Made by a program: the position numbers and the translations under genes. From Guillardia theta CCMP2712 (taxonomy: Eukaryota; Protista; Cryptophyta), in contig NW_005434505.1 in assembly GCF_000315625.1 (NCBI RefSeq), positions 1 through 33,097 of the forward strand: a stretch of 33,097 nucleotides of DNA, given 5' to 3'. This document shows, piece after piece, positions 1,961 to 29,900 of this stretch; the first letter of the stretch is position 1, and every line of letters begins with the position of its first letter. Under the pieces are notes generated by a model that worked only from the letters and a program-made list of their open reading frames with translations, made no database searches and was not told the DNA's origin.

Positions 1961-2809
1961 TGCGCCATCACCGTTCTTGTACGCACCGCTATGGTAGCAG
2001 GAGAGGAGAAGGCTGGTGAGTAATGCAGAGCTTGACCCTCGTGCTCCTGCCTTCCACTACCTCTTCCGCTCCTCTCATTCCTTCCTCTGCTCCTCCCTCC
2101 CTCCCTTGATAGATCCATTCCTCGCCACGCCCATCCTGGGATCGCAAGGAATCGAGTCGTGCACGAGTTTCAACTAGCTTTTGTGACGACCATCCTTGTA
2201 TCCTCCTTGAATCTAAGCATGGAACAACTTCGTCATCTTGTCTCCTTGTGCTGAGCAAGCCCTCCACCTGCATCGCTCATGTTCTATGCAACAATCCTTG
2301 AAATCCGATTCAACACAAACCCACATTTTGTTTCACTGGGTCGGGCCTTCCTCTTTTTCTTTCATCACCAGGATTCCTCTCCGTCTATTCTTGTTTCTAT
2401 ATGATCGCACGGATCCTTCCTTGAAAGATTTCATTCCCCCCGCAATCTCTTGATGCTGCAGTCCCGCTGCGATGTTGAATCACATTTCTGTACTTTTGGG
2501 TTGTGTTGAGAAAAACAAACTCGACTTGGAACATGATGGTCGAAGTTGATGCTTTCTCACAGTGTTAATGTTTTTTTTCACTCATTCACTTCGTCTCGAA
2601 GTGTACTCTCTTCTCAAAACACTTCTTCAGTTGTTTGTCCTATAAGTTGTAACTTTGTTCTACTCCATCGAACGCACTTGCACGCACTCTATTCCTCGTG
2701 CTGGTGTCTTGCTCTAGCTTCCTCGTTCAACATTCTCTCAGCCTACTCCGCCTGTGCTGCTTGTAATGTCTGCTTCCTCTCAGGGGGACGCTGAGGAGGC
2801 CGAGGAACG

Positions 2810-3725
2810 ATGAAGTTCGGGAAGCGGATTCGCGCCGAGGCGACAGAGCAATGGGCAGATCACTACCTGGACTACAAGGTGAGATGAAGCAGTGCCGGGG
2901 GAAGAAGACTAGGGCAGGAGGGCAGGAGGGCAGGAGGGCAGGAGGGCAGGAGGGCGGGAGGAAGGAGGGCAGGAGGGCAGGAGGGCAGGAGGGCAGGAGG
3001 GCAGGAGGGCAGACGTAAGGGGGGGGAGGGAGCAGCAAGGGTTGACGGGAGGAGAGGGAGAAGTGAGTATGAGGGGAGGATCAGAGGAAGAGGAGGATAT
3101 GCTACTCTCGATGCGTCAGGTCTGACCGCTGTGCTCATCAGGATCTGAAGCACAAGCTCAAGGCCCTGGTGGAGGACGGAGCACCTGCAGCGTCGGAGGA
3201 GAAGTTCAGGAGCGCGATCCTTGCGGAGATCGACAAGGTGAGGAGACGGTGGTCAGCTGACGTTGAAGGCTGACGGGACCGCAGGTTGACAGGTTCTTCC
3301 TGAACCAGGAAACGGAGCTGTACACAGAGTGAGTGGCGGAGGAAGGGGGAGAGAGCGGAAGCAGGGAGAAGGGAGTAGGGAGGGAGGGAGGGGATTAGAA
3401 ACTGAGGTCAGGATATTTCGGCCAGGGTTAGGAAGTCCAGGTGGACAGGTAGGAGGACGGGGAGCAGAGGGGAGGGGGGAGCAGAAGATGGAGGGAGTGA
3501 GGGAGAAAGAGATGGAAACAAAGGACGGGAGGAGGAGGAGGAGGAACTGAATTCTGACGCTGTTGCACAGGTTTCGTTCACTGTGCCAAGAAGCTTCGAC
3601 CGTCAAGGTCGATCACTCGCCTGAGCGTGCAGCAGCTTCGAAATGTAAAGCTGGACACTTGCGGTTGGATGCCCTGGTTAGGATGAAGAAGTGTCGGGGA
3701 TGACGATGACGACGATGATGATGAC

Positions 3726-3786
<61 letters not shown>

Positions 3787-6437
3787 CAGGAGCTCTCACG
3801 ATTGCTGATACTTCGCAGGTTTCATCACTGGAAGGAACGTCGGCAGGAAAGATGATTCAGTCTCTTCTTCAGTTTTCAGCTAAGGTGAGGACGAGGAAGA
3901 CGACGAAGGAGGGAGGGAGGGAGTCGGGAGGAGGAGGAGGAGGAGGAGGAGGAGGAGGAGGAGGAAAAGGAGGAGTACGTTGTCCTCTGAGCAACAGTGG
4001 GCAGGTCGACAGCCTCCGCAAGTTCGTCATGCTCAACAGCCTGGCCGTCATCAAGATCACCAAGAAACACGACAAGCAGTCAGCCGTGCAGCTGCGGTGG
4101 GAGATGATTCAGCATGTTCACCGGCGGCACTTTTACAGCTCCAGGAGGTTTGGCTCCCTCATCACCGACGTCGAGGTCCTCGCGTCGGAGGTCATGCATA
4201 GGGTCACCCTCTTCAAGCCCCTCCCCGAGAGCTACTCCTGCCCCATCTGCCTTGGCCTCCTCTGTAACCCGGTGAGCCGCAGCCCGTCCTCCCTCCTCCT
4301 TCTCAGCCTCCATCCTTTCTGCTATCTGTGCCCTCTTCCCCACTTCCCTTCTCCTCCTCCTCGTTCTCCTCGACTCCATCTGGTTTATTCTCCTCCCTCC
4401 TCCNNNNNNNNNNNNNNNNNNNNNNNNNNNNNNNNNNNNNNNNNNNNNNNNNNNNNNNNNNNNNNNNNNNNNNNNNNNNNNNNNNNNNNNNNNNNNNNNN
4501 NNNGAATCGTCCGGCCTCCAGCAACTCTTCCATGTCCACCCCAGCAAGTCTCCAGCTGCGTGCGGGGCCTCCAAGAGGACCACGTGGAGATGGAGGAGGT
4601 GGGCATGGAAGTCCGTCCAAGGCTCAAGAGGAGGAGCGTCGGGCAGGGAGGCAAGCAGGCGCTAGGAGGAAGACCGCAGACAGAGTCGGAGCTACAGGTG
4701 CTCCTGCTCCTGCTCCTGCTCTTGCTCCTGCTCTTGCTCCTGCTCCTGCTCTTCTCCTCCACATCCCTCCTCCCCTGACCTCACCCCTCATCCTCCGCTT
4801 CCTCGTCTTCCTCCTTTGCCTTCCCTGCTTTTTTGTTTTTGATGATTCTCCTTTCCTCTTCTCCTCCCGGCTCACTGAACCCCAACTCTCCTTTCTCCTG
4901 CTCGATCCTCTCTCACGCAGCAGCAGGCACCTCCCATCCTCCTCAACGCTGCTCTCCTTCGTTCTCACTTCAACCTCCCGCTCAACGATGCGGCTCGTCG
5001 CCTCGGTAGGAAGAGGAGGGGGGAGGGGGGAAGGCACAGCGGTGGAGGAGAAGGACAGAGCGACATGAGAAAGGAAGAGAACAAAGAGGAGGAGGAGGAG
5101 GACGAGGACGAGGAGGAGGAGGAGGCTGATAATTGGACCAGGTGTGTGTGCGACGGCGATCAAGAAAGTTTGTCGCAAGATGGGCATCAAGCAGTGGCCG
5201 CACAGGAAGTTGAAAGCCGTTGAGAAGCGACTCGCTCTCCTCCAGGTCCCTTGCTTTCTCCATCTCCTGTTCCATCTCCTCGCCTCGATCCTCCCCTCCC
5301 TCTCCTCCTTCCTCCCTGCCTTCCTCCTTCCTCTCTGCCTTCGTCCTGCTCCCTCACCCTACCTTCGCTCCTCGCTCCTCGCTCCTCCTTTACTTCCCCT
5401 CCCTCTTCGCTTCCTTACGACGCCATAGGCGGAGCACAAGTACGTGAGCGAGGAGACGTTGTTCGCCAAGTACCAGGCGGAGATCAAGGAGCTGGAGGAG
5501 AAGCGCGACAAGCTTCTGCAGGGCCTCGACTGCGACGTTGCTGACGTGGCGGATGCGGAGGACGCCAAGAAGTCGGTGACTCCATCCCGCAAAGTCAAGG
5601 TGGAGCCCAGCACGGGCCTGCGCTCTCCCACCTCCTCCAGCAGGACGTACCCGCTCTCCCCAGCTCGGGAGACGCTGGACGAGGATGACGAGGAGGAGGA
5701 GGAAGAGGAGGACCTTGGGGAGATGCCTGCGGCAGTGGAGCAGGAGGGGATCGCCGGAGGAGGTGACGGGGCGGAGCAGGACGTATGGGAGATGCTGCAC
5801 AGGATGGTGTCGGAGGAAGGGGAGGACACCCTAGGCCTCAACGAGCAGGCCAAGGCTCATCCAGCTCCTACTCCAGCTCCTCTTCCTGCCTCTGCTGCTG
5901 CTCAGGATGTCACTTGCTCGCTCCCTCCAAGCTCCTCGGGGCCAGCTCCAGGTCAGCAGTTCCCTCGTCTCCTCCCTTGCTCACCTGCCGCCCAAGGCAC
6001 CACCGACGTAGTTGACGAGTACCGAGACCTCCGAGCCCAGCTGGTCGCCCTGCAGGAGGAGATTCTGCACCTGCGGCAATTCAGCATGGCGCTGCTCAAG
6101 GAGAGGGGAGACATTGCTTCCCAGCTCCAGGGACGCGAGGAGGAGATCAGTAAGTCCCGCCTCTCCCGTCCTCCCCGCCTCCTGACTAACTTCCTTCCCA
6201 GGAGACCTCCAGCAGCGGTGCCACTCTCTAGAGTCCCAGCTCATCCTGGTGAGCTCCCCTCCATCATCCAGTAGGACCTGAGCTGACGCCCTGCAGGCGA
6301 GGACGAGCGATCATGGGAGCGAGGAGCTGCTGACCCCTTCGACGCTCTCCCTCCCTCCTGCCTCCTCCTTCTCCAGTCTCCTCAGCGATAAGCTGATGCA
6401 GGGGAGGGCCGGTGTGCGGCAAGGCGAAGACTTGTAA
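2810..6437 (+). CDS. Putative SPX - RING - RWP-RK - coiled-coil protein (model spans a 100-N gap)
   Basis: Exons 2810-2878, 3142-3237, 3285-3328, 3571-3676, 3819-3884, 4005-4271, [gap 4404-4503], 4504-4697, 4921-5005, 5142-5245, 5429-6149, 6202-6248, 6297-6437; visible junctions are GT-AG and phase-consistent. SPX: MKFGKRIR..W..HYLDYK|DLKHKLK, EIDK|VDRFF, LRKFVMLNSLAVIKITKKHDK. RING start: YSCPICLGLLCNP. RWP-RK: LLRSHFNLPLNDAARRLG|VCATAIKKVCRKMGIKQWPHRKL. Individual domains are well supported; continuity across the gap is inferred. Confidence 0.75.
2912..3010 (+). repeat. (GGGCAGGA)n octamer tandem repeat in intron 1 of the SPX gene
   Basis: Roughly ten copies of gggcagga with one interruption. 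Confidence 0.85.
3698..3786 (+). repeat. (GAT)n microsatellite, intronic
   Basis: GAT/GAC triplet run read directly. Confidence 0.9.
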
Positions 6438-6594
6438 TGACTTGTAACGATTGTTGTGTGAAGTAATGTAAGCTAATCGACCTCGCGATCTTGAATGAAA
6501 CTCGTGCTGAGTGTAGATGAGGAGGAGAGGCGAGGGTGGTGCGAGTTGACAGGTCTGAAAGTGATACAACGCAGCTACCATCATCTCCTATGTC

Positions 6595-6730
6595 GTCATC
6601 GTATCATCATCATGGTCATCATCATCATATCATCATCCTCCTCCTCCTCCTCATGCCATCGTCGTCGTCGTCGTCGTCGTCGTCATCATCATCATCATCG
6701 TCGTCGTCGTCGTCGTCGTCATCATCATCA

Positions 6731-6762
<32 letters not shown>
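6595..6762 (+). repeat. Compound (TCA)n/(TCG)n microsatellite
   Basis: Alternating TCA and TCG blocks downstream of the SPX/RWP-RK stop codon. Confidence 0.9.
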
Positions 6763-6763
<1 letters not shown>

Positions 6764-6829
6764 GTTGCCGCACTGCTACATGCACTATCGTTCTGTTGCT
6801 GGATTATTTCCATATCAGAGTCTCACGCT

Positions 6830-10688: not shown

Positions 10689-11407
10689 AGCGGTTGACAG
10701 CCTGTGAGAAGGACGAGGCGGAGGAGAAAGTGGAGTAGGAGTAGGAGTAGGAGGAGGAGGGAGGAGGAGGAGGAGTAGGAGAAGGAGGAGGAGGGAGGAG
10801 GAGGAGGAGTAGGAGTAGGAGGAGGAGGAGGAGGAGGANNNNNNNNNNNNNNNNNNNNNNNNNNNNNNNNNNNNNNNNNNNNNNNNNNNNNNNNNNNNNN
10901 NNNNNNNNNNNNNNNNNNNNNNNNNNNNNNNNNNNNNNNNNNNNNNNNNNNNNNNNNNNNNNNNNNNNNNNNNNNNNNNNNNNNNNNNNNNNNNNNNNNN
11001 NNNNNNNNNNNNNNNNNNNNNNNNNTGAGGAGGATGAAATGATAAAGTTCAAAGAGAACTCCAGACCGTGAAGGCGTATGAGCTTTAGTAGTGGATGGTG
11101 GTGATGAGGAGGAGGACGAGGAGGGAGAGGGGGAGTCTAGATGTTTCCACGGGTGTGAAAGGAGCAAACGCCACGGGCTGTAAATCCGTGGTAACGTGAT
11201 TTTACTACGTGTCATTGATTTCCAATCGTTGGGTTTTGGAGTACTTTTTATAATTCCTGTTAAAAGTTTTACGGAGTGTTCCGATCCGTAGGTCAGCTAG
11301 GCTCTAGTCATACCTCGCACCCGGAATAGTACCACACATCGGTTGAGTGAAGATGCCCGAGGGGATGCGGAGCCGGGACTGCGAGGACTCGAGTTCTCGT
11401 ACTGCTT

Positions 11408-12495: not shown

Positions 12496-13697
12496 GGCGT
12501 TGCAGTCTATACAAACGTTAAGACTGTGAATGTTTACTACATGGCCTACCTCGTGATCGAATGCTCTCGTGCTATGTTTACTATACACGACGTATCCGGG
12601 TCACGGTATTGCCATGGCAGCTCTACTTGGAACATGTTGAAAACGTACTTGTCAACTTATCAACCCAATATTCAAATGTTGATATGTCAGTTTCAAATGG
12701 ATCTTTTCCGCACAATAAAAGGGAGATTTGCAACATCACCCAGCCGATCAGCTAGCACGCAAGTAGAGACCCAGACTTGCTAGTCAAACGAGATTGAATC
12801 ATGCGAAAGGCTCTCTCAGGAGTTCATGGTAGCTACCGCTCAGCGGCTCTTGGAGTACCTCACTTCATGGTGATGGTCACAGCGATCGTTCACGACATCT
12901 CACTCATCCTCCCCTTGTGTACTGATCTCTCAAAAGGCGTTTACTTGGAGTTATGTTTATAGTGTAGGGTTGTTGAGAAGAAGGAACATACAGCAAGGCA
13001 TTGGAAGCACTGAAGACATGCATCCATGCAGCTTCTAACGTTGCACAGGGGNNNNNNNNNNNNNNNNNNNNNNNNNNNNNNNNNNNNNNNNNNNNNNNNN
13101 NNNNNNNNNNNNNNNNNNNNNNNNNNNNNNNNNNNNNNNNNNNNNNNNNNNNNNNNNNNNNNNNNNNNNNNNNNNNNNNNNNNNNNNNNNNNNNNNNNNN
13201 NNNNNNNNNNNNNNNNNNNNNNNNNNNNNNNNNNNNNNNNNNNNNNNNNNNNNNNNNNNNNNNNNNNNNNNNNNNNNNNNNNNNNNNNNNNNNNNNNNNN
13301 NNNNNNNNNNNNNNNNNNNNNNNNNNNNNNNNNNNNNNNNNNNNNNNNNNNNNNNNNNNNNNNNNNNNNNNNNNNNNNNNNNNNNNNNNNNNNNNNNNNN
13401 NNNNNNNNNNNNNNNNNNNNNNNNNNNNNNNNNNNNNNNNNNNNNNNNNNNNNNNNNNNNNNNNNNNNNNNNNNNNNNNNNNNNNNNNNNNNNNNNNNNN
13501 NNNNNNNNNNNNNNNNNNNNNNNNNNNNNNNNNNNNNNNNNNNNNNNNNNNNNNNNNNNNNNNNNNNNNNNNNNNNNNNNNNNNNNNNNNNNNNNNNNNN
13601 NNNNNNNNNNNNNNNNNNNNNNNNNNNNNNNNNNNNNNNNNNNNNNNNNNNNNNNNNNNNNNNNNNNNNNNNNNNNNNNNNNNNNNNNNNNNNNNNN

Positions 13698-24879: not shown

Positions 24880-26580
24880 AAAAAGTCGAGCCGCACGGTG
24901 ACACCGTCCGAATCTGAGGATCAGTGTACTACGTGACCCGGTGACCCGTATCACCGCCGGGCCCGGCGGCGGCACGGTGACTCGCCGGCCTCCGGGGAGT
25001 CCGAGTCCGGGAGTCCTGGCCCTCCGACGGCCGCAGCGAACTACGGTCCGAGTCGGACTCAGCCGGGCTCCACTGAGGCCGGAGCCGCCGGCGCCCGGCC
25101 GGCACTGCGGCGGCGCAGTGGGCCTCACTGAGTCACCGGGATGGGCGATGCCACGGTACTGTAGCCTCCGCGGCCCAGTGTAGTACGGTACGGGGNNNNN
25201 NNNNNNNNNNNNNNNNNNNNNNNNNNNNNNNNNNNNNNNNNNNNNNNNNNNNNNNNNNNNNNNNNNNNNNNNNNNNNNNNNNNNNNNNNNNNNNNCGGCG
25301 GGCGGCCGGCGCGGCGGCGCGGCTGTGACCCGGTGAACCCATTGCAGTTCGATCATGATGGTCCGATCTGCCAAGCCGCGGCGGGGCCCCGGGGCTGCTA
25401 GCCTATCGGGGAGCCTCGGAGAGCCTGACCGATCGCTGACTCGGAGGCTGCCATCGGCCGGGCACTCGGAGTGCCCGGCCGCTCACCTCAGTGGCGGGCC
25501 GCGCCTCCCGCCGCCCCCCCCGGCATCATGCATGTCGGACCGGGCCGAGTCGGACCGTGTGTGAGTCACGCCGTGACTCTGTGACGAGTCAATGTCAGCC
25601 TACTGGTCCGTCACTGCTTCGGATATTCAGGCTGGCAAGGCTTGTCCGACGGCTCTCATCATCCGATTACGGCCCGGCTGCCCGACGGTTCACGGTTTCG
25701 GCGATGTGCAACTTGAACTTCGCGGCCTCGCAAGTCAAGTTCCGAAGTTCCGAGCCAATGTTTCGGCCGCCGGACCGCGGCGGCCGCTCCGGGCACCACC
25801 GTACTACCGTAGTACGGTACCGTGACCCCCGCGCCCGTCAGGGGCTCGAGCGGCGGGCCGACCGTCCGTCACTCCGTGCAGTGCAGTCACCTGGCCGCCG
25901 CTGAGTGCGGCGGCCCGGCGGCCGGGTGCCCGGGGGGTATCGTCGACTCAGCGATGTAGTGAGAACCCGGATCCGTCCTTCAGTATTTACAAAACTTGAA
26001 AACAACTCCGAAAAACCTGACTTGGCGCCACCTCAAAACTTTGAGGACAAAATCCGTGACGCCGCTGGTCCACGTTCCGGGCCGGCGCCGTCGGCCGCGC
26101 CCACGTTCCGACGGCGACGCCGCGCCGCGGCCCCGGGACAGCCGGGCCCCCGGACCGTACGGTGCCAGTCACTGTGACGGACTGAGCCGCGGCCAGGGCT
26201 GCCACCCGGCTCCGTGACTCGGACTCTCCCAGTGGGAGTGGCAGTCCGACTTCAATGAGAGTCAGGCCGGTTACCGGGAGGCCGGCACTGCGCATCCGGA
26301 GACTCACCGTCACTGAGTCGGAGCGGCCATGAGTCAACGGCTAGTAGGCACAGTTGGTTGCTGAGATTCCGGGCCTGGCAGAACGCCGGGCGGCGGCGGC
26401 GGGCTCTGCGACCCAGCACTCAGAACCTAGCGGCTTCTTTGAGGCCAACGCCCGGCCGGGGCCCGGCAACCTTCAGGCCCGGGCCCGGCCCGGTTCCCCG
26501 CGCCCCTCTCAGTTTCGTTCGACTCGTGACTTCTCAACCCTTGAGTCCGATCCCCCGTGCCGGACGTGCCTGGCGAAACC
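24880..26580. other. CpG-rich, short-palindrome-rich intergenic zone
   Basis: Same word composition as 640-1035 and 6830-8250; lies downstream of the NAPRT stop; contains a gap of about 100 N. Confidence 0.65.
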
Positions 26581-26908: not shown

Positions 26909-29900
26909 CTATGAGGAGGAGGCGGACGAATGCGTAGGAGCCTCCGACGTCCAGAGGTCGTGCATCATCTTAAAAAGCTTCTCCGATATTGAGACCTGCA
27001 AGCAAAGCTAAGCAGAGAGCGAGGAGGAGGACGGAGGGGAGAAAAGGAAAGGAGGGAGGAGGGGAGAGGAGAAAGGAGGGAAGAGAGGAGAAGTCCGGGG
27101 GGGCAGGCTTACATTGTAGGGCTGCGGGTCAAAGCGCCTTTTGTGCTCCTCAGGAAGAGCTTGAAGCTCTCTGCGAGAAACAAAGAAATGAAAACGAGTA
27201 ATTCTAACGGAGGATGAAGAAGCAGAAGAGAGAAGAAAGCAGAAAGGATAAGAGTTCGAGAAGGTAGAGGAGCAGCGAGAGCGGATGAGGAGGGCAAACG
27301 AACAGCAAGGGCGTCATCGATACCTCTTGGCTCGATCTCTGATAGCATCAACATTCTCCACCTGAAGTTTTGTTAGACAATCACAAGAAGAAGAATAAGG
27401 AGAAGAGTCAATGAGGACGAGAAGGAGTCAGGCGAGGCGGGGTAGGTGATTGGAAAGGGTTGAAAAGACAATGACGAGAAGGGAGAGGAGGACGGGCGAA
27501 GGGCAAGGGCAAGGGCAAGGGTAATGGCGAAAAGTCGAGAACAGGGAGGTGGAGGGGGAGGGAGAGGGGGAGGGCAAAAGCGAGAGGGAAATTGGGAGAG
27601 GGAGAGGGGAAAGCGTGAGGGAGAGGGAGAGGGAGAGGGAGAGGAAAAGGGGAAGGGAGAGGGAGAGGGAGAGGGAGAGGGGGAGGGGGAGGGAGAGGGA
27701 GAGGGAGAGGGAGAGGGAGAGGGAGTACCAGGGTTAAAATCTTGCCATCCCAGACGCAGGTCAGAACATCTTCGACTTGTGCTGGAGTGAAGCTAATTCT
27801 CTTGCTTGCATCCAGAGGGTGACAGCAAGTGATGGCCTCCCCCACCTGTTGCAAGTTGAGTGCGAGAGGAGGACGCGCAAGGGAGAGAGCGGGCGAGAAA
27901 CAAAAGGGAGGATAGTCACAAGGATACGGGAGAATTGGAACGAGGGAAAGAGGAGGAGGAAGCGAAGGCGGAAGAGGAGAGAGGAGAAGAGAGGAGAAGA
28001 GAGGAGAAGAGAGGAGAGAAGAAGGGCGGAGCGGGGAGGGAGGGTGTGAGAGGGAAGAAAGAAGAGGGGGCAGGAGAGGGAAGAAGAAGGGCGGAGAGGG
28101 GGGGAAGGAGAGGCGAGGAGAGGAAAGGAGAGGAGAGGGGGGAAGGAGAGGCGAGGAGAGGAAGGAGGGAGGGAGGGAGGGGGAGGGAANNNNNNNNNNN
28201 NNNNNNNNNNNNNNNNNNNNNNNNNNNNNNNNNNNNNNNNNNNNNNNNNNNNNNNNNNNNNNNNNNNNNNNNNNNNNNNNNNNNNNNNNNNNNNNNNNNN
28301 NNNNNNNNNNNNNNNNNNNNNNNNNNNNNNNNNNNNNNNNNNNNNNNNNNNNNNNNNNNNNNNNNNNNNNNNNNNNNNNNNNNNNNNNNNNNNNNNNNNN
28401 NNNNNNNNNNNNNNNNNNNNNNNNNNNNNNNNNNNNNNNNNNNNNNNNNNNNNNNNNNNNNNNNNNNNNNTAGACGAAAGAAGGAGGGGAGGGGCAAGCA
28501 GTTGCAGCATTGACCTTGGGAGCTCCGTCATGCTTCACCTCATCGTCCGTCATCATCAGGTCAACCCGCGGAGAGCCTGCAGGAAAAATCGGCGATGAGC
28601 ATGAGAGGAGGAAAGGGGAAGGCGAGAAGAGAGGAAGGGAGAGGAGCAGGGGGGAGATGAAGGGGATGAGGGTGAGGTAAGAGAGGTAAGAGAAAGGAGG
28701 GAGGAGGGAGATGGGAGGAGGGACGAGGAAGGGACGAGGGAAAATCACCAGTGGAGTCGAAAAGGCGGAAGACTCTCTTGGATCCTGGGATGCTGACTTT
28801 GACGAGATCATGGGAGATCTTGATGCGAGGGAGAGAGCCCATGGCGACGAGCTTGTAGACGCAACCGAGAGCTGGCTGAGCCTGAAGGGAAGATAGTCAG
28901 ACGCGCGAGCGATCAAGAGATTTGACTGCAGAGTGAGAGAGGAGAGCAGGTGAGGAGATGGAGGAAGCGGAAGAAGAGGAGAGGGATGGAGAAAGAACAG
29001 GACAGAAAAGAGCGTGCAGGACAAGAAAGAGGACAAGAGCAGGAAGTGGCGGGTGAGAAGAAGGAAGGTGAGAAGAAGGAAGCGGAGGAGGGAGGGACGG
29101 GAAACTCACTTGACAAGTGACGAGGTTGGTCCCAATTCCAAACATATCGATCTCATGGCCCTATAACGGCATGAGGGGACAGCTGCCACGTCATTCAGTG
29201 ACTCACCTTGTCGTTTAGTTCGTGCAGTGAATCTTCTGAGATGTCATTGCTGGTACGGGTGTTAGCACGAGCGGAGAGGAAGAGGAGGGCAGGATGGGAG
29301 AGGACAAGATGCAGGAGGCGCGGAAGAAAGTGCAAGAGGGGGCGGGAAGGCGAGCAAGGGAGCGACTGCACGAAGCAGGATAGGAGGAGAAGGACAAACA
29401 GACGTGGAGGTGGTGGTGAAAGAGGAGGAGCGGGTGTGGAAAGGAGGGGTGGTGGGGGGGAGCGCCATATTCAGTGGTGTACCTAGCAACGATGTTGAGG
29501 CGAGAGGCAAAGTTGGGGATGGAAAATTTCTCCTCGATCTCTCTGAACAGTTTCCTTGCCTGCAGCATCAAATTCATCATCAAGGCAAGGAGACTCTTCA
29601 TGCCACCGTTTCCTTTCACGCTCCCCTCTCCTTTCGCTCTTGTCACCTCTATCGGCCCTCCCTCTTCATATCCTTTCCACCCCTTCATTCGACCCCTTCC
29701 CAAGATCTTCCTCCTCCTCCTCCTCACTATGACGCCGCTGCCACCACCACCGCCACCCCCCCCTCTCTCACCGACTTCGACATTTCTGCCAAGTCTCCGC
29801 TGTCTAATCGTATTCCTATCGGGAAGTAGCCCAACTCAATGAGGGCTAGTGCGCAGCACAGAAAGTTGGGAATGCCTGCACAAAGTCTCAGAACATCTCA

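What the first reader, a model, noticed from the sequence alone, without database searches (positions are those of the whole stretch)
2810..6437. Apparent SPX-RING-RWP-RK fusion: phosphate-sensor domain, E3 ligase domain and RWP-RK DNA-binding domain in one gene
Seen: manual splicing gives a complete SPX domain retaining the basic-surface residues (YLDYKDLKHKLK; IKITKKHDK), then the start of a RING finger (CPICLGLLCNP), and after a 100-N gap on the same strand an open exon splicing in phase into a full RWP-RK domain (HFNLPLNDAARRLGVCATAIKKVCRKMGIKQWPHRKL) and a C-terminal coiled coil. Known: SPX domains bind inositol poly/pyrophosphates as phosphate-status sensors; SPX-RING is the architecture of the plant NLA/BAH1 E3 ligase; RWP-RK is the DNA-binding domain of NLP/NIN/RKD/NIT2/MID; in rice SPX4 and NLP3 act as separate interacting proteins. 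Inference: one polypeptide could couple phosphate sensing, ubiquitination and transcription, possibly integrating N and P signals. I do not know of this three-domain architecture being described. The six-frame track hides it because the exons are short.
Basis: partly seen in the sequence, partly recalled or inferred. Interest (0 to 1): 0.9.

Follow-up and report, generated by a model that had tools for sequence, protein, structure and literature searches.

The report
Real SPX-RING-RWP-RK fusion gene
The two halves on either side of the assembly gap are one expressed gene of the cryptophyte alga Guillardia theta; its 737-residue protein joins a phosphate-status sensor domain, a ubiquitin-ligase RING finger and an RWP-RK DNA-binding domain, an architecture kept in related cryptophytes that I found described in no paper.

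Summary
A de novo transcript (L011, 2364 nt, poly(A); protein P0020, 737 aa) matches every window exon base for base on both sides of the gap. It also supplies 323 nt (residues 217-324) that the assembly lacks: the rest of the RING finger and a conserved Cys4 tail.

The true gap is therefore larger than 100 N. The first 80 bases after it lack two single C's compared with the transcript.

P0020 passes Pfam cut-offs for SPX, zf-C3HC4 (barely) and RWP-RK. The NCBI model of this locus (GUITHDRAFT_147735, 639 aa) jumps the gap and mis-splices the RWP-RK domain, so it scores only as SPX.

The architecture recurs in:
- an ungapped paralogue in the same genome (contig C6), where an intronless SPX-RING frame runs through a 49-nt in-phase intron into RWP-RK;
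- two Hanusia phi proteins;
- three environmental or SRA contigs.

The linker is under purifying selection (dN/dS 0.17) and its indels are multiples of three.

Function is inferred, not shown. The most likely role is an inositol-pyrophosphate-gated RWP-RK transcription factor with a built-in E3 ligase. It is a new variant built from known modules.

The parts
1976..2015 (+). 5'UTR exon; donor GTGAGT at 2016
   Evidence: Exact match to transcript L011 nt 1-40
2784..2878 (+). Exon with start codon (ATG at 2810); first SPX helix, residues 1-23
   Evidence: Exact match to L011; Pfam SPX positions 1-23, E 2.2e-5
3142..3237 (+). SPX exon (DLKHKLK...EIDK)
   Evidence: Exact match to L011; GT..AG borders
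3285..3328 (+). SPX exon
   Evidence: Exact match to L011
3571..3676 (+). SPX exon (variable loop); donor GT at 3677
   Evidence: Exact match to L011 nt 276-381; replaces my first, shorter guess
3819..3884 (+). SPX exon
   Evidence: Exact match to L011
4005..4271 (+). SPX C-terminal helices (KITKKHDK lysine cluster) and the first two RING cysteines (C206, C209); ends in phase 0 at codon 216
   Evidence: Exact match to L011 nt 448-714; Pfam SPX positions 305-337
4272..4403 (+). Start of the intron that runs into the gap
   Evidence: GT donor at 4272; not in the transcript
4404..4503 (.). Assembly gap. It hides at least 323 nt of coding sequence (residues 217-324: six of the eight RING ligands and the conserved Cys4 tail) plus the rest of the intron
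   Evidence: L011 nt 715-1037 have no counterpart in the window or elsewhere in G000
4504..4697 (+). Partial exon: Ser/Pro-rich linker and the invariant motif MEVRPRLKRRSVGQGGKQALGGRP. The window lacks one C at 4539-4542 and one C at 4580-4581 compared with the transcript
   Evidence: Alignment to L011 nt 1038-1233: 2 single-base gaps, otherwise identical
4927..5005 (+). RWP-RK domain, first half
   Evidence: Exact match to L011; Pfam RWP-RK
5142..5245 (+). RWP-RK domain, second half (QWPHRK) and start of the adjoining helix
   Evidence: Exact match to L011; Pfam RWP-RK E 5.5e-11 on this exon alone
5429..5951 (+). Helical segment after RWP-RK, acidic low-complexity region, conserved AEQDVWEMLHRM motif
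   Evidence: Exact match to L011; helices 436-480 and 564-581 in the model; conservation
5997..6149 (+). C-terminal long helix / coiled coil, after a 45-nt intron at 5952-5996
   Evidence: Exact match to L011; helix 628-698, pLDDT 79-93
6201..6248 (+). Coiled-coil exon
   Evidence: Exact match to L011
6297..6515 (+). Last exon: stop TAA at 6435-6437, 3'UTR, poly(A) site near 6515
   Evidence: Exact match to L011 nt 2140-2358, followed by A-run in the transcript

Best explanation
Window 1976-6515 (+) is one 14-or-more-exon nuclear gene of Guillardia theta CCMP2712, at the locus annotated as GUITHDRAFT_147735.

It encodes a 737-residue protein with this layout:
- SPX domain, residues 1-200;
- C3HC4 RING, 206-244;
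- conserved tail with a second CxxC...CxxC motif, 279-301;
- Ser/Pro-rich linker ending in the invariant motif MEVRPRLKRRSVGQGGKQALGGRP;
- RWP-RK domain, 399-441, continuing into a helical segment to about 480;
- acidic disordered region with a conserved AEQDVWEMLHRM motif;
- a roughly 70-residue C-terminal coiled coil.

Shown here: the gene is a single transcription unit and a single open reading frame. The assembly gap hides residues 217-324. The architecture is conserved and under purifying selection in cryptophytes.

Inferred (about 40% for this particular mechanism): the protein is a nuclear, dimeric RWP-RK transcription factor. Its DNA-binding or oligomerisation module is gated by its own SPX domain according to inositol pyrophosphate (phosphate status), as free SPX proteins gate PHR and NLP factors in plants. 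The RING finger would add ubiquitin-dependent turnover of the protein itself or of partners.
For: Single gene:
- Transcript L011 matches all window exons exactly on both sides of the gap and carries one complete ORF, P0020.
- The NCBI protein of G. theta CCMP2712 (P0021) shares the same exons.

Domains:
- Pfam on P0020: RWP-RK 70.2 bits (cut-off 29.3), SPX 54.0 (27.8), zf-C3HC4 21.4 (21).
- All eight RING ligands are present with canonical spacing.
- The SPX model has pLDDT 87-98. Its TM-score by target is 0.83-0.86 to XPR1 SPX crystal structures, including the IP8 complex.
- The KITKKHDK lysine cluster aligns with KILKKYDK / KILKKHDK of solved SPX domains. K144, K147, K148 and K151 are invariant across the aligned homologues; Y22 and K26 are conserved in the four rows of that alignment that contain the N-terminus.

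Conservation of the fusion:
- The paralogue at G000:C6 has an intronless SPX-RING frame. A 49-nt GT..AG intron shifts it by +1 into the RWP-RK frame, which has no ATG before the domain.
- Hanusia phi has P0010 (726 aa) and P0022 (711 aa).
- P0011 and P0023, and contigs L014 and L015, are colinear.
- In the two word-based searches that reached proteins of 400 aa or more, every hit sharing the linker motif belongs to such a locus.

Coding constraint, G. theta versus Hanusia: dN/dS is 0.073 overall and 0.17 in the linker, with dS 0.76. Indels in the linker are 3 and 6 nt.

Mechanism hint: SPX(1-200) against RWP-RK+helix(390-500) gave weak support.
- Score 0.37, best control 0.02.
- The mark was reached by 51 of 78 solved complexes and 2 of 108 mismatched pairs.
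- Scores of 0.60 or under were seen in only 5 of those 78, and in all 4 mismatches that passed.
- Runs agree in at least 93% of contacts; partner pLDDT is at least 74.
Against: - The join in this species therefore rests on one de novo transcript assembly.
- The two missing C's after the gap are called assembly errors by inference only.
- No experiment bears on ligand binding, E3 activity, DNA binding or localisation.
- The RING scores only marginally in Pfam.
- The RWPxRK signature reads QWPHRK.
- The complex score is weak. It may echo solved SPX-PHR complexes, and no InsP ligand could be included.
- My searches for an InsP8 kinase and for MYB-CC factors in this genome were uninformative.
Confidence: 0.8

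Rival explanations
1. Two separate genes. An NLA-like SPX-RING gene ends inside the gap and an independent RWP-RK gene starts there. The joined transcript would then be a read-through or an assembly chimera.
For: The gap hides the junction in this assembly. The post-gap exon contains in-frame Met codons. Prokaryote-style gene callers split related loci into separate ORFs.
Against: - The transcript has one uninterrupted 737-codon frame with all introns removed.
- The 108 residues hidden by the gap align with the paralogue without a stop.
- The ungapped paralogue joins the two parts through an in-phase 49-nt intron, and its RWP-RK frame has no upstream ATG.
- The Met of the linker motif is Leu in L015/P0014.
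- The linker is under purifying selection with indels in threes.
Confidence: 0.03
2. The window copy is a pseudogene. The two single-base deletions after the gap are real and break the frame.
For: Compared with the transcript, the window lacks one C at 4539-4542 and one at 4580-4581.
Against: - The transcript is identical to the window over all other exon bases, about 2 kb.
- No second near-identical locus exists in the assembly, so the intact mRNA must come from here.
- Both differences are homopolymer undercalls within 80 bases of a contig end.
- dN/dS of 0.07 against Hanusia argues for a working gene.
Confidence: 0.04
3. Same protein, different logic. It is chiefly a chromatin-targeted E3 ligase. 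RWP-RK brings the RING to specific DNA sites to ubiquitinate other factors or histones, and SPX tunes ligase activity as proposed for plant NLA. It would not act as a transcription activator itself.
For: - The RING and its Cys4 tail are the most conserved part of the protein: 96% identity and dN/dS 0.035.
- SPX-RING is fused to many different effector domains in protists: kinase, FCP1-type phosphatase, DHH.
- SPX-RING-BET has been listed in algae and basal plants (PMC8717665).
Against: A conserved acidic-hydrophobic motif and an acidic region after the DNA-binding domain look like an activation region. The weak complex hint points to SPX contacting the RWP-RK module. The two readings do not exclude each other.
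Confidence: 0.3
4. The fused ORF is a precursor or one of several isoforms. Internal initiation, alternative polyadenylation or cleavage in the disordered linker would release free SPX-RING and free RWP-RK proteins.
For: The linker 326-389 is predicted to be disordered. It contains a basic RPRLKRRS motif and Met codons.
Against: No shorter transcript or protein of this species was found in the length-limited searches. The short relatives I examined were truncated contigs, ORF-calling artefacts or an adapter artefact.
Confidence: 0.1

Closest known systems
NLA / BAH1 (plant SPX-RING E3 ligases, SPX class IV)
   Same: N-terminal SPX domain followed directly by a C3HC4 RING finger. The SPX basic-surface residues are retained.
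   Different: About 490 further residues carry a second Cys4 motif, an RWP-RK domain and coiled coils. Orthology to NLA was not tested. Only about 25-30% identity to other SPX-RING proteins. The genome also has an SPX-RING gene without RWP-RK (P0025, contig C8).
RWP-RK transcription factors (NLP/NIN, RKD, Chlamydomonas NIT2 and MID)
   Same: RWP-RK domain well above the Pfam cut-off (70 bits), followed by a helical segment.
   Different: No PB1 or GAF-like domain was found. The signature reads QWPHRK. The N-terminal SPX-RING is unique to this group. It is 2 of at least 150 RWP-RK loci in this genome.
SPX1/2/4 with PHR (MYB-CC) and rice SPX4 with NLP3: two-protein phosphate and nitrate signalling modules
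   Same: A PP-InsP-sensing SPX domain paired with a DNA-binding factor that carries an adjoining coiled coil. In rice a RING-type ligase controls SPX4 stability (established knowledge, not tested here).
   Different: Here sensor, ligase and factor are covalently joined. Regulation would be intramolecular or within a dimer. There is no evidence yet that it responds to P or N.
Other SPX fusions to transcription-related domains (EIN3-SPX, SPX-RING-BET) listed for algae and basal plants in PMC8717665
   Same: An SPX domain or SPX-RING joined to a nuclear or transcription domain.
   Different: A different DNA- or chromatin-binding module. RWP-RK and cryptophytes are not mentioned in that survey.

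Membership tests
SPX domain (PF03105) | Profile score above Pfam gathering cut-off | tested here: met
   P0020 scores 54.0 bits against a cut-off of 27.8. Single window exons score 24-25 bits each.
SPX domain (PF03105) | SPX helical fold | tested here: met
   Model pLDDT 87-98 over residues 1-200. Foldseek TM by target 0.83-0.86, rmsd 1.7-2.8 A, to XPR1 SPX structures 8tyu and 8tyv.
SPX domain (PF03105) | Basic ligand surface: Tyr/Lys of the second helix and the K-x2-K-K-x2-K cluster | tested here: met
   Y22, K26, K144, K147, K148 and K151 are present. They align with KILKKYDK / KILKKHDK of solved SPX proteins. The role of these residues comes from the literature (Wild et al. 2016, recalled).
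SPX domain (PF03105) | Binds InsP6 / PP-InsP | not testable with these tools
   Needs ITC or another binding assay.
C3HC4 RING finger E3 | Eight zinc ligands with C-x2-C-x9-39-C-x-H-x2-C-x2-C-x4-48-C-x2-C spacing | tested here: met
   C206, C209, C221, H223, C226, C229, C241 and C244 in P0020. In the window itself only C206 and C209 are present; the rest lies in the gap.
C3HC4 RING finger E3 | Profile score above cut-off | tested here: inconclusive
   PF00097 scores 21.4 against 21, just over. The other six RING profiles listed are below their cut-offs. Foldseek finds RING domains 1z6u, 4s3o and 6fga only at E about 0.02.
C3HC4 RING finger E3 | E2-dependent ubiquitin transfer | not testable with these tools
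   Needs an in vitro ubiquitination assay.
RWP-RK (PF02042) | Profile score above cut-off | tested here: met
   70.2 bits against 29.3, residues 399-441.
RWP-RK (PF02042) | Literal RWPxRK signature | tested here: not met
   It reads QWPHRK in all fused members. W, P, R and K are kept and the first R is Q.
RWP-RK (PF02042) | Sequence-specific DNA binding | not testable with these tools
   Needs DAP-seq or EMSA. No solved RWP-RK structure was found by sequence.
NLP subfamily of RWP-RK | C-terminal PB1 domain and N-terminal GAF-like nitrate-responsive region | tested here: not met
   No PB1 or GAF hit at E <= 0.001 in P0020 or P0022.
NLA orthologue | Groups with plant NLA in an SPX-RING phylogeny | not tested
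   No tree was built. I make only the architectural comparison.

The most novel reading that the evidence does not exclude
A one-polypeptide nutrient switch. Inositol pyrophosphate binding to the N-terminal SPX domain would directly gate the RWP-RK DNA-binding and oligomerisation module of the same protein or of its dimer partner, and the RING would set the protein's lifetime. Phosphate status would then be wired straight into an RWP-RK (nitrogen- or gamete-type) transcription programme. As a 'Rosetta stone' fusion it would also argue that SPX-RING ligases and RWP-RK factors are ancient direct partners, as rice SPX4-NLP3 and Arabidopsis NLA suggest.
Probability: 0.35. Interest if true: 0.8.

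Novelty: new variant of a known kind. Interest (0 to 1): 0.62.

Why it matters
[quoted passage not shown] In plants they control transcription only through separate partner proteins.

A conserved natural fusion of the sensor, a ligase and an RWP-RK factor would be a compact, genetically simple system for testing how PP-InsP sensing is passed to DNA binding and protein turnover.

It would also be independent evolutionary support for a direct link between phosphate sensing and RWP-RK (nitrogen-type) regulation. It points to a candidate master nutrient regulator in cryptophytes, an ecologically important algal group whose transcription factors are almost unstudied.

Practically, the public gene model of this locus is wrong. 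It has no RING and a broken RWP-RK domain, so domain-based surveys miss the gene.

Tried and rejected
Reads:
- No letters of 2909-3013 were sent to any search tool afterwards. Locus L005, which contains them, was never used. The window file served only as the local subject in my own scripts.
- The look-up of sequencing runs listed 15 runs holding 0.37-0.69 of the words of 4504-6437. That fits spliced RNA, but none is on record as RNA and none could be laid.

Corrected guesses of my own:
- My first exon 4 (3571-3607) was wrong. The transcript gives 3571-3676.
- I took the C-terminus of P0001 (...DRKSVV) for a relative of the linker motif. It is Illumina adapter sequence at the contig end. Whether the Rhodomonas-like homologues P0001 and P0002 are fused stays open.

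Apparent counter-examples that dissolved:
- The apparent 'RWP-RK-only' relatives P0014 and P0024 are ORF-calling artefacts of fused loci.
- P0009 is likewise a wrong-frame ORF call on Hanusia genomic DNA.

Uninformative searches:
- Own-genome searches for MYB-CC (PF14379: no hit, controls silent) and the PPIP5K N-domain (PF18086: 26 bits, under cut-off) say nothing either way, because genes match exon by exon. The SPX family search found only 2 places for the same reason.
- The ESM Atlas feature search gave no usable hit.
- PDB by sequence has no RWP-RK relative.
- The search of earlier findings returned nothing for this place.
Full report
**What is in the window**

The region is intron-rich eukaryotic DNA. 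Pfam on single exons finds:
- SPX at 2810-2878 and 4005-4271;
- RWP-RK at 4921-5007 and 5144-5245, the latter at E 5.5e-11.

Exon 4005-4271 ends with the first two RING cysteines (CPICLGLLCNP) and a GT donor. The intron then runs into the 100-N gap at 4404-4503.

**Is it one gene? The direct test and the substitutes**

Fifteen public runs hold 0.37-0.69 of the words of 4504-6437. That is the share expected for spliced RNA, but it could not be examined further.

Protein searches gave the answer instead.
- A search with the SPX/RING-start exon found cryptophyte SPX-RING proteins. One of them, P0003, ends with MEVRPRLKRRSVGQ. In the window that motif lies after the gap, in the exon that splices into RWP-RK.
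- On the contig of P0003 (L001), the SPX-RING frame is followed by a 49-nt GTGAGC...CAG intron. This intron shifts the frame by +1 into GGKQALGGRP...RWP-RK. That second frame has no ATG before the domain.
- The same locus, at 98% identity, is a paralogue inside the window's own genome at G000:C6:762650-763807, intronless through SPX-RING and without any gap.

**The transcript that spans the gap**

An exhaustive search with the C-terminal exon found P0010, a 726-aa protein with SPX, RING and RWP-RK. Searching with P0010 then found two further proteins.
- P0020: 737 aa, sources JGI and MMETSP, flagged 'type:complete'.
- P0021: the NCBI model GUITHDRAFT_147735 of Guillardia theta CCMP2712.

The contig of P0020 is L011, 2364 nt with a poly(A) tail. 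It matches every window exon exactly, including a 5'UTR exon at 1976-2015 and the 3' end near 6515.

Transcript nt 715-1037 (323 nt, residues 217-324) have no counterpart in the window. Elsewhere in the 87-Mb assembly they match only the paralogues, at 74%. The gap therefore hides the other six RING ligands and a conserved tail with a second CxxC...CxxC motif, and it must be longer than 100 bases.

Within 80 bases after the gap the window lacks two single C's in C-runs (4539-4542 and 4580-4581). Everything else is identical. I read these as low-quality contig-end bases. This is an inference, because reads could not be checked.

The NCBI model P0021 jumps from CNP straight to a post-gap frame and reads through the intron inside the RWP-RK domain. 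That is why it scores only as SPX.

**Domains of P0020**

| Region | Evidence |
|---|---|
| RWP-RK, residues 399-441 | 70.2 bits, cut-off 29.3 |
| SPX | 54.0 bits, cut-off 27.8 |
| zf-C3HC4 | 21.4 bits, cut-off 21; other RING profiles just below their cut-offs |
| RING ligands | all eight present with canonical spacing |

An AlphaFold2 model from a 42-row alignment has mean pLDDT 72. By region:
- SPX: 87-98;
- RING: 86-95;
- RWP-RK plus following helices, residues 390-490: 81-93;
- C-terminal helix 628-698: 79-93;
- the linkers are disordered.

Foldseek places the SPX part on XPR1, Vtc4, Gde1 and rice SPX1/2 structures. TM by target is up to 0.86 on the XPR1 SPX-IP8 complex. The RING part falls weakly on RING domains.

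The lysine cluster KITKKHDK aligns with that of solved SPX domains. K144, K147, K148 and K151 are invariant across the aligned homologues, and Y22 and K26 are conserved in the four rows that contain the N-terminus.

**How conserved is the fusion?**

Fused members found:
- the window gene;
- its C6 paralogue;
- Hanusia phi P0010 (orthologue of the window gene, 86-88% identity) and P0022 (orthologue of the C6 gene);
- P0011 and P0023, from unnamed sources;
- a Tara Oceans scaffold, L014, with SPX, RING and RWP-RK frames in a row;
- an SRA contig, L015, where the post-RING tail sits upstream of the RWP-RK frame.

The apparent RWP-RK-only hits, P0014 and P0024, are ORF-calling artefacts of such loci.

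Both paralogues occur in both genera, so the duplication predates the Guillardia/Hanusia split.

Between the G. theta and Hanusia transcripts, dN/dS is:
- 0.073 overall;
- 0.03-0.04 in SPX, RING and RWP-RK;
- 0.17 in the linker, with dS about 0.8 and linker indels of 3 and 6 nt.

The junction is therefore coding sequence under constraint, not an untranslated bridge.

**How it probably works (inference)**

The parts suggest three functions.
- The RWP-RK domain, an adjoining helical segment, an acidic region with a conserved hydrophobic-acidic motif and a long C-terminal coiled coil point to a dimeric nuclear transcription factor.
- The N-terminal SPX domain with an intact basic surface points to inositol polyphosphate or pyrophosphate binding.
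- The RING points to E2-dependent ubiquitination.

By analogy with the plant SPX-PHR and SPX4-NLP3 modules (established knowledge), I propose that ligand-bound SPX contacts the RWP-RK/helix module and controls DNA binding or oligomerisation. The RING would set turnover.

A complex prediction of SPX(1-200) with residues 390-500 gave only weak support.
- Score 0.37; best control 0.02.
- The mark was reached by 51 of 78 solved complexes and 2 of 108 mismatches.
- Scores of 0.60 or under were seen in just 5 of those 78 and in all 4 mismatches that passed.
- Runs agree in at least 93% of contacts; partner pLDDT is at least 74.
- The score may reflect memory of SPX-PHR structures.

A chromatin-targeted E3 ligase is a serious alternative, and it is not exclusive.

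**Comparison with what is known, and novelty**

The protein works like, and contains, an NLA-type SPX-RING unit and an RWP-RK factor. It is not an NLP, since it has no PB1 or GAF domain. Its signature reads QWPHRK. Orthology to NLA is untested.

Full-text searches found no paper combining SPX, RING and RWP-RK in one protein, and none on RWP-RK fusions in Guillardia. Reviews list four plant SPX classes. A survey of algae and basal plants lists EIN3-SPX and SPX-RING-BET among others, but not this one.

Proteins with this architecture do exist, unnamed, in the MMETSP, EukProt and JGI collections. I rate it a new variant built from known modules: real, conserved, mis-annotated in the reference genome, and functionally untested.

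Noticed in passing
G000, many contigs (e.g. C50:148837-159337, C2:281944-291187, C5:1081920-1086053): The RWP-RK family is greatly expanded in this genome. At least 150 matches pass the Pfam cut-off (571 first-look candidates), and many sit in tandem or inverted clusters.
   Followed up: no
G000:C8:833746-834786 (L004); protein P0025: A third SPX-RING paralogue, 41% identical, 545 aa, without RWP-RK. Its C-terminal part contains a hydrophobic, membrane-helix-like stretch.
   Followed up: partly
L002:1288-1311: The last residues and the stop codon of the Logan-derived protein P0001 come from Illumina adapter sequence (AGATCGGAAGAGCGTCGTGTAGG) at the contig end. Its apparent C-terminus is an artefact.
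   Followed up: yes
window 4005-5245 (NCBI model GUITHDRAFT_147735 = P0021): The public gene model skips the RING remainder and reads through the intron 5006-5141 inside the RWP-RK domain. Pfam therefore sees only SPX.
   Followed up: yes
window 5952-5996: This 45-nt intron is a multiple of three and has no stop in frame. If retained, it would insert 15 residues into the disordered region before the C-terminal coiled coil.
   Followed up: no
window 10839-11025, 13052-13697, 25196-25295, 28190-28470: There are four further assembly gaps in the window. Introns and flanks are rich in triplet and purine-rich simple repeats, e.g. (GAT)n at 3700-3790 and (GTC/ATC)n at 6600-6765.
   Followed up: no
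hits (e.g. P0029, P0031, P0032, P0040, P0046, P0058, P0030): In other protists and green algae, SPX-RING is fused to quite different effector domains: protein kinase, FCP1/NIF-type phosphatase and DHH phosphoesterase. SPX-RING looks like a portable regulatory cassette.
   Followed up: no
P0020 residues 279-301 (hidden in gap 4404-4503): A second CxxC-x15-CxxC motif after the RING is conserved in all fused members and partly in P0025. Model confidence there is low (pLDDT 57-72), so its fold is unknown.
   Followed up: partly
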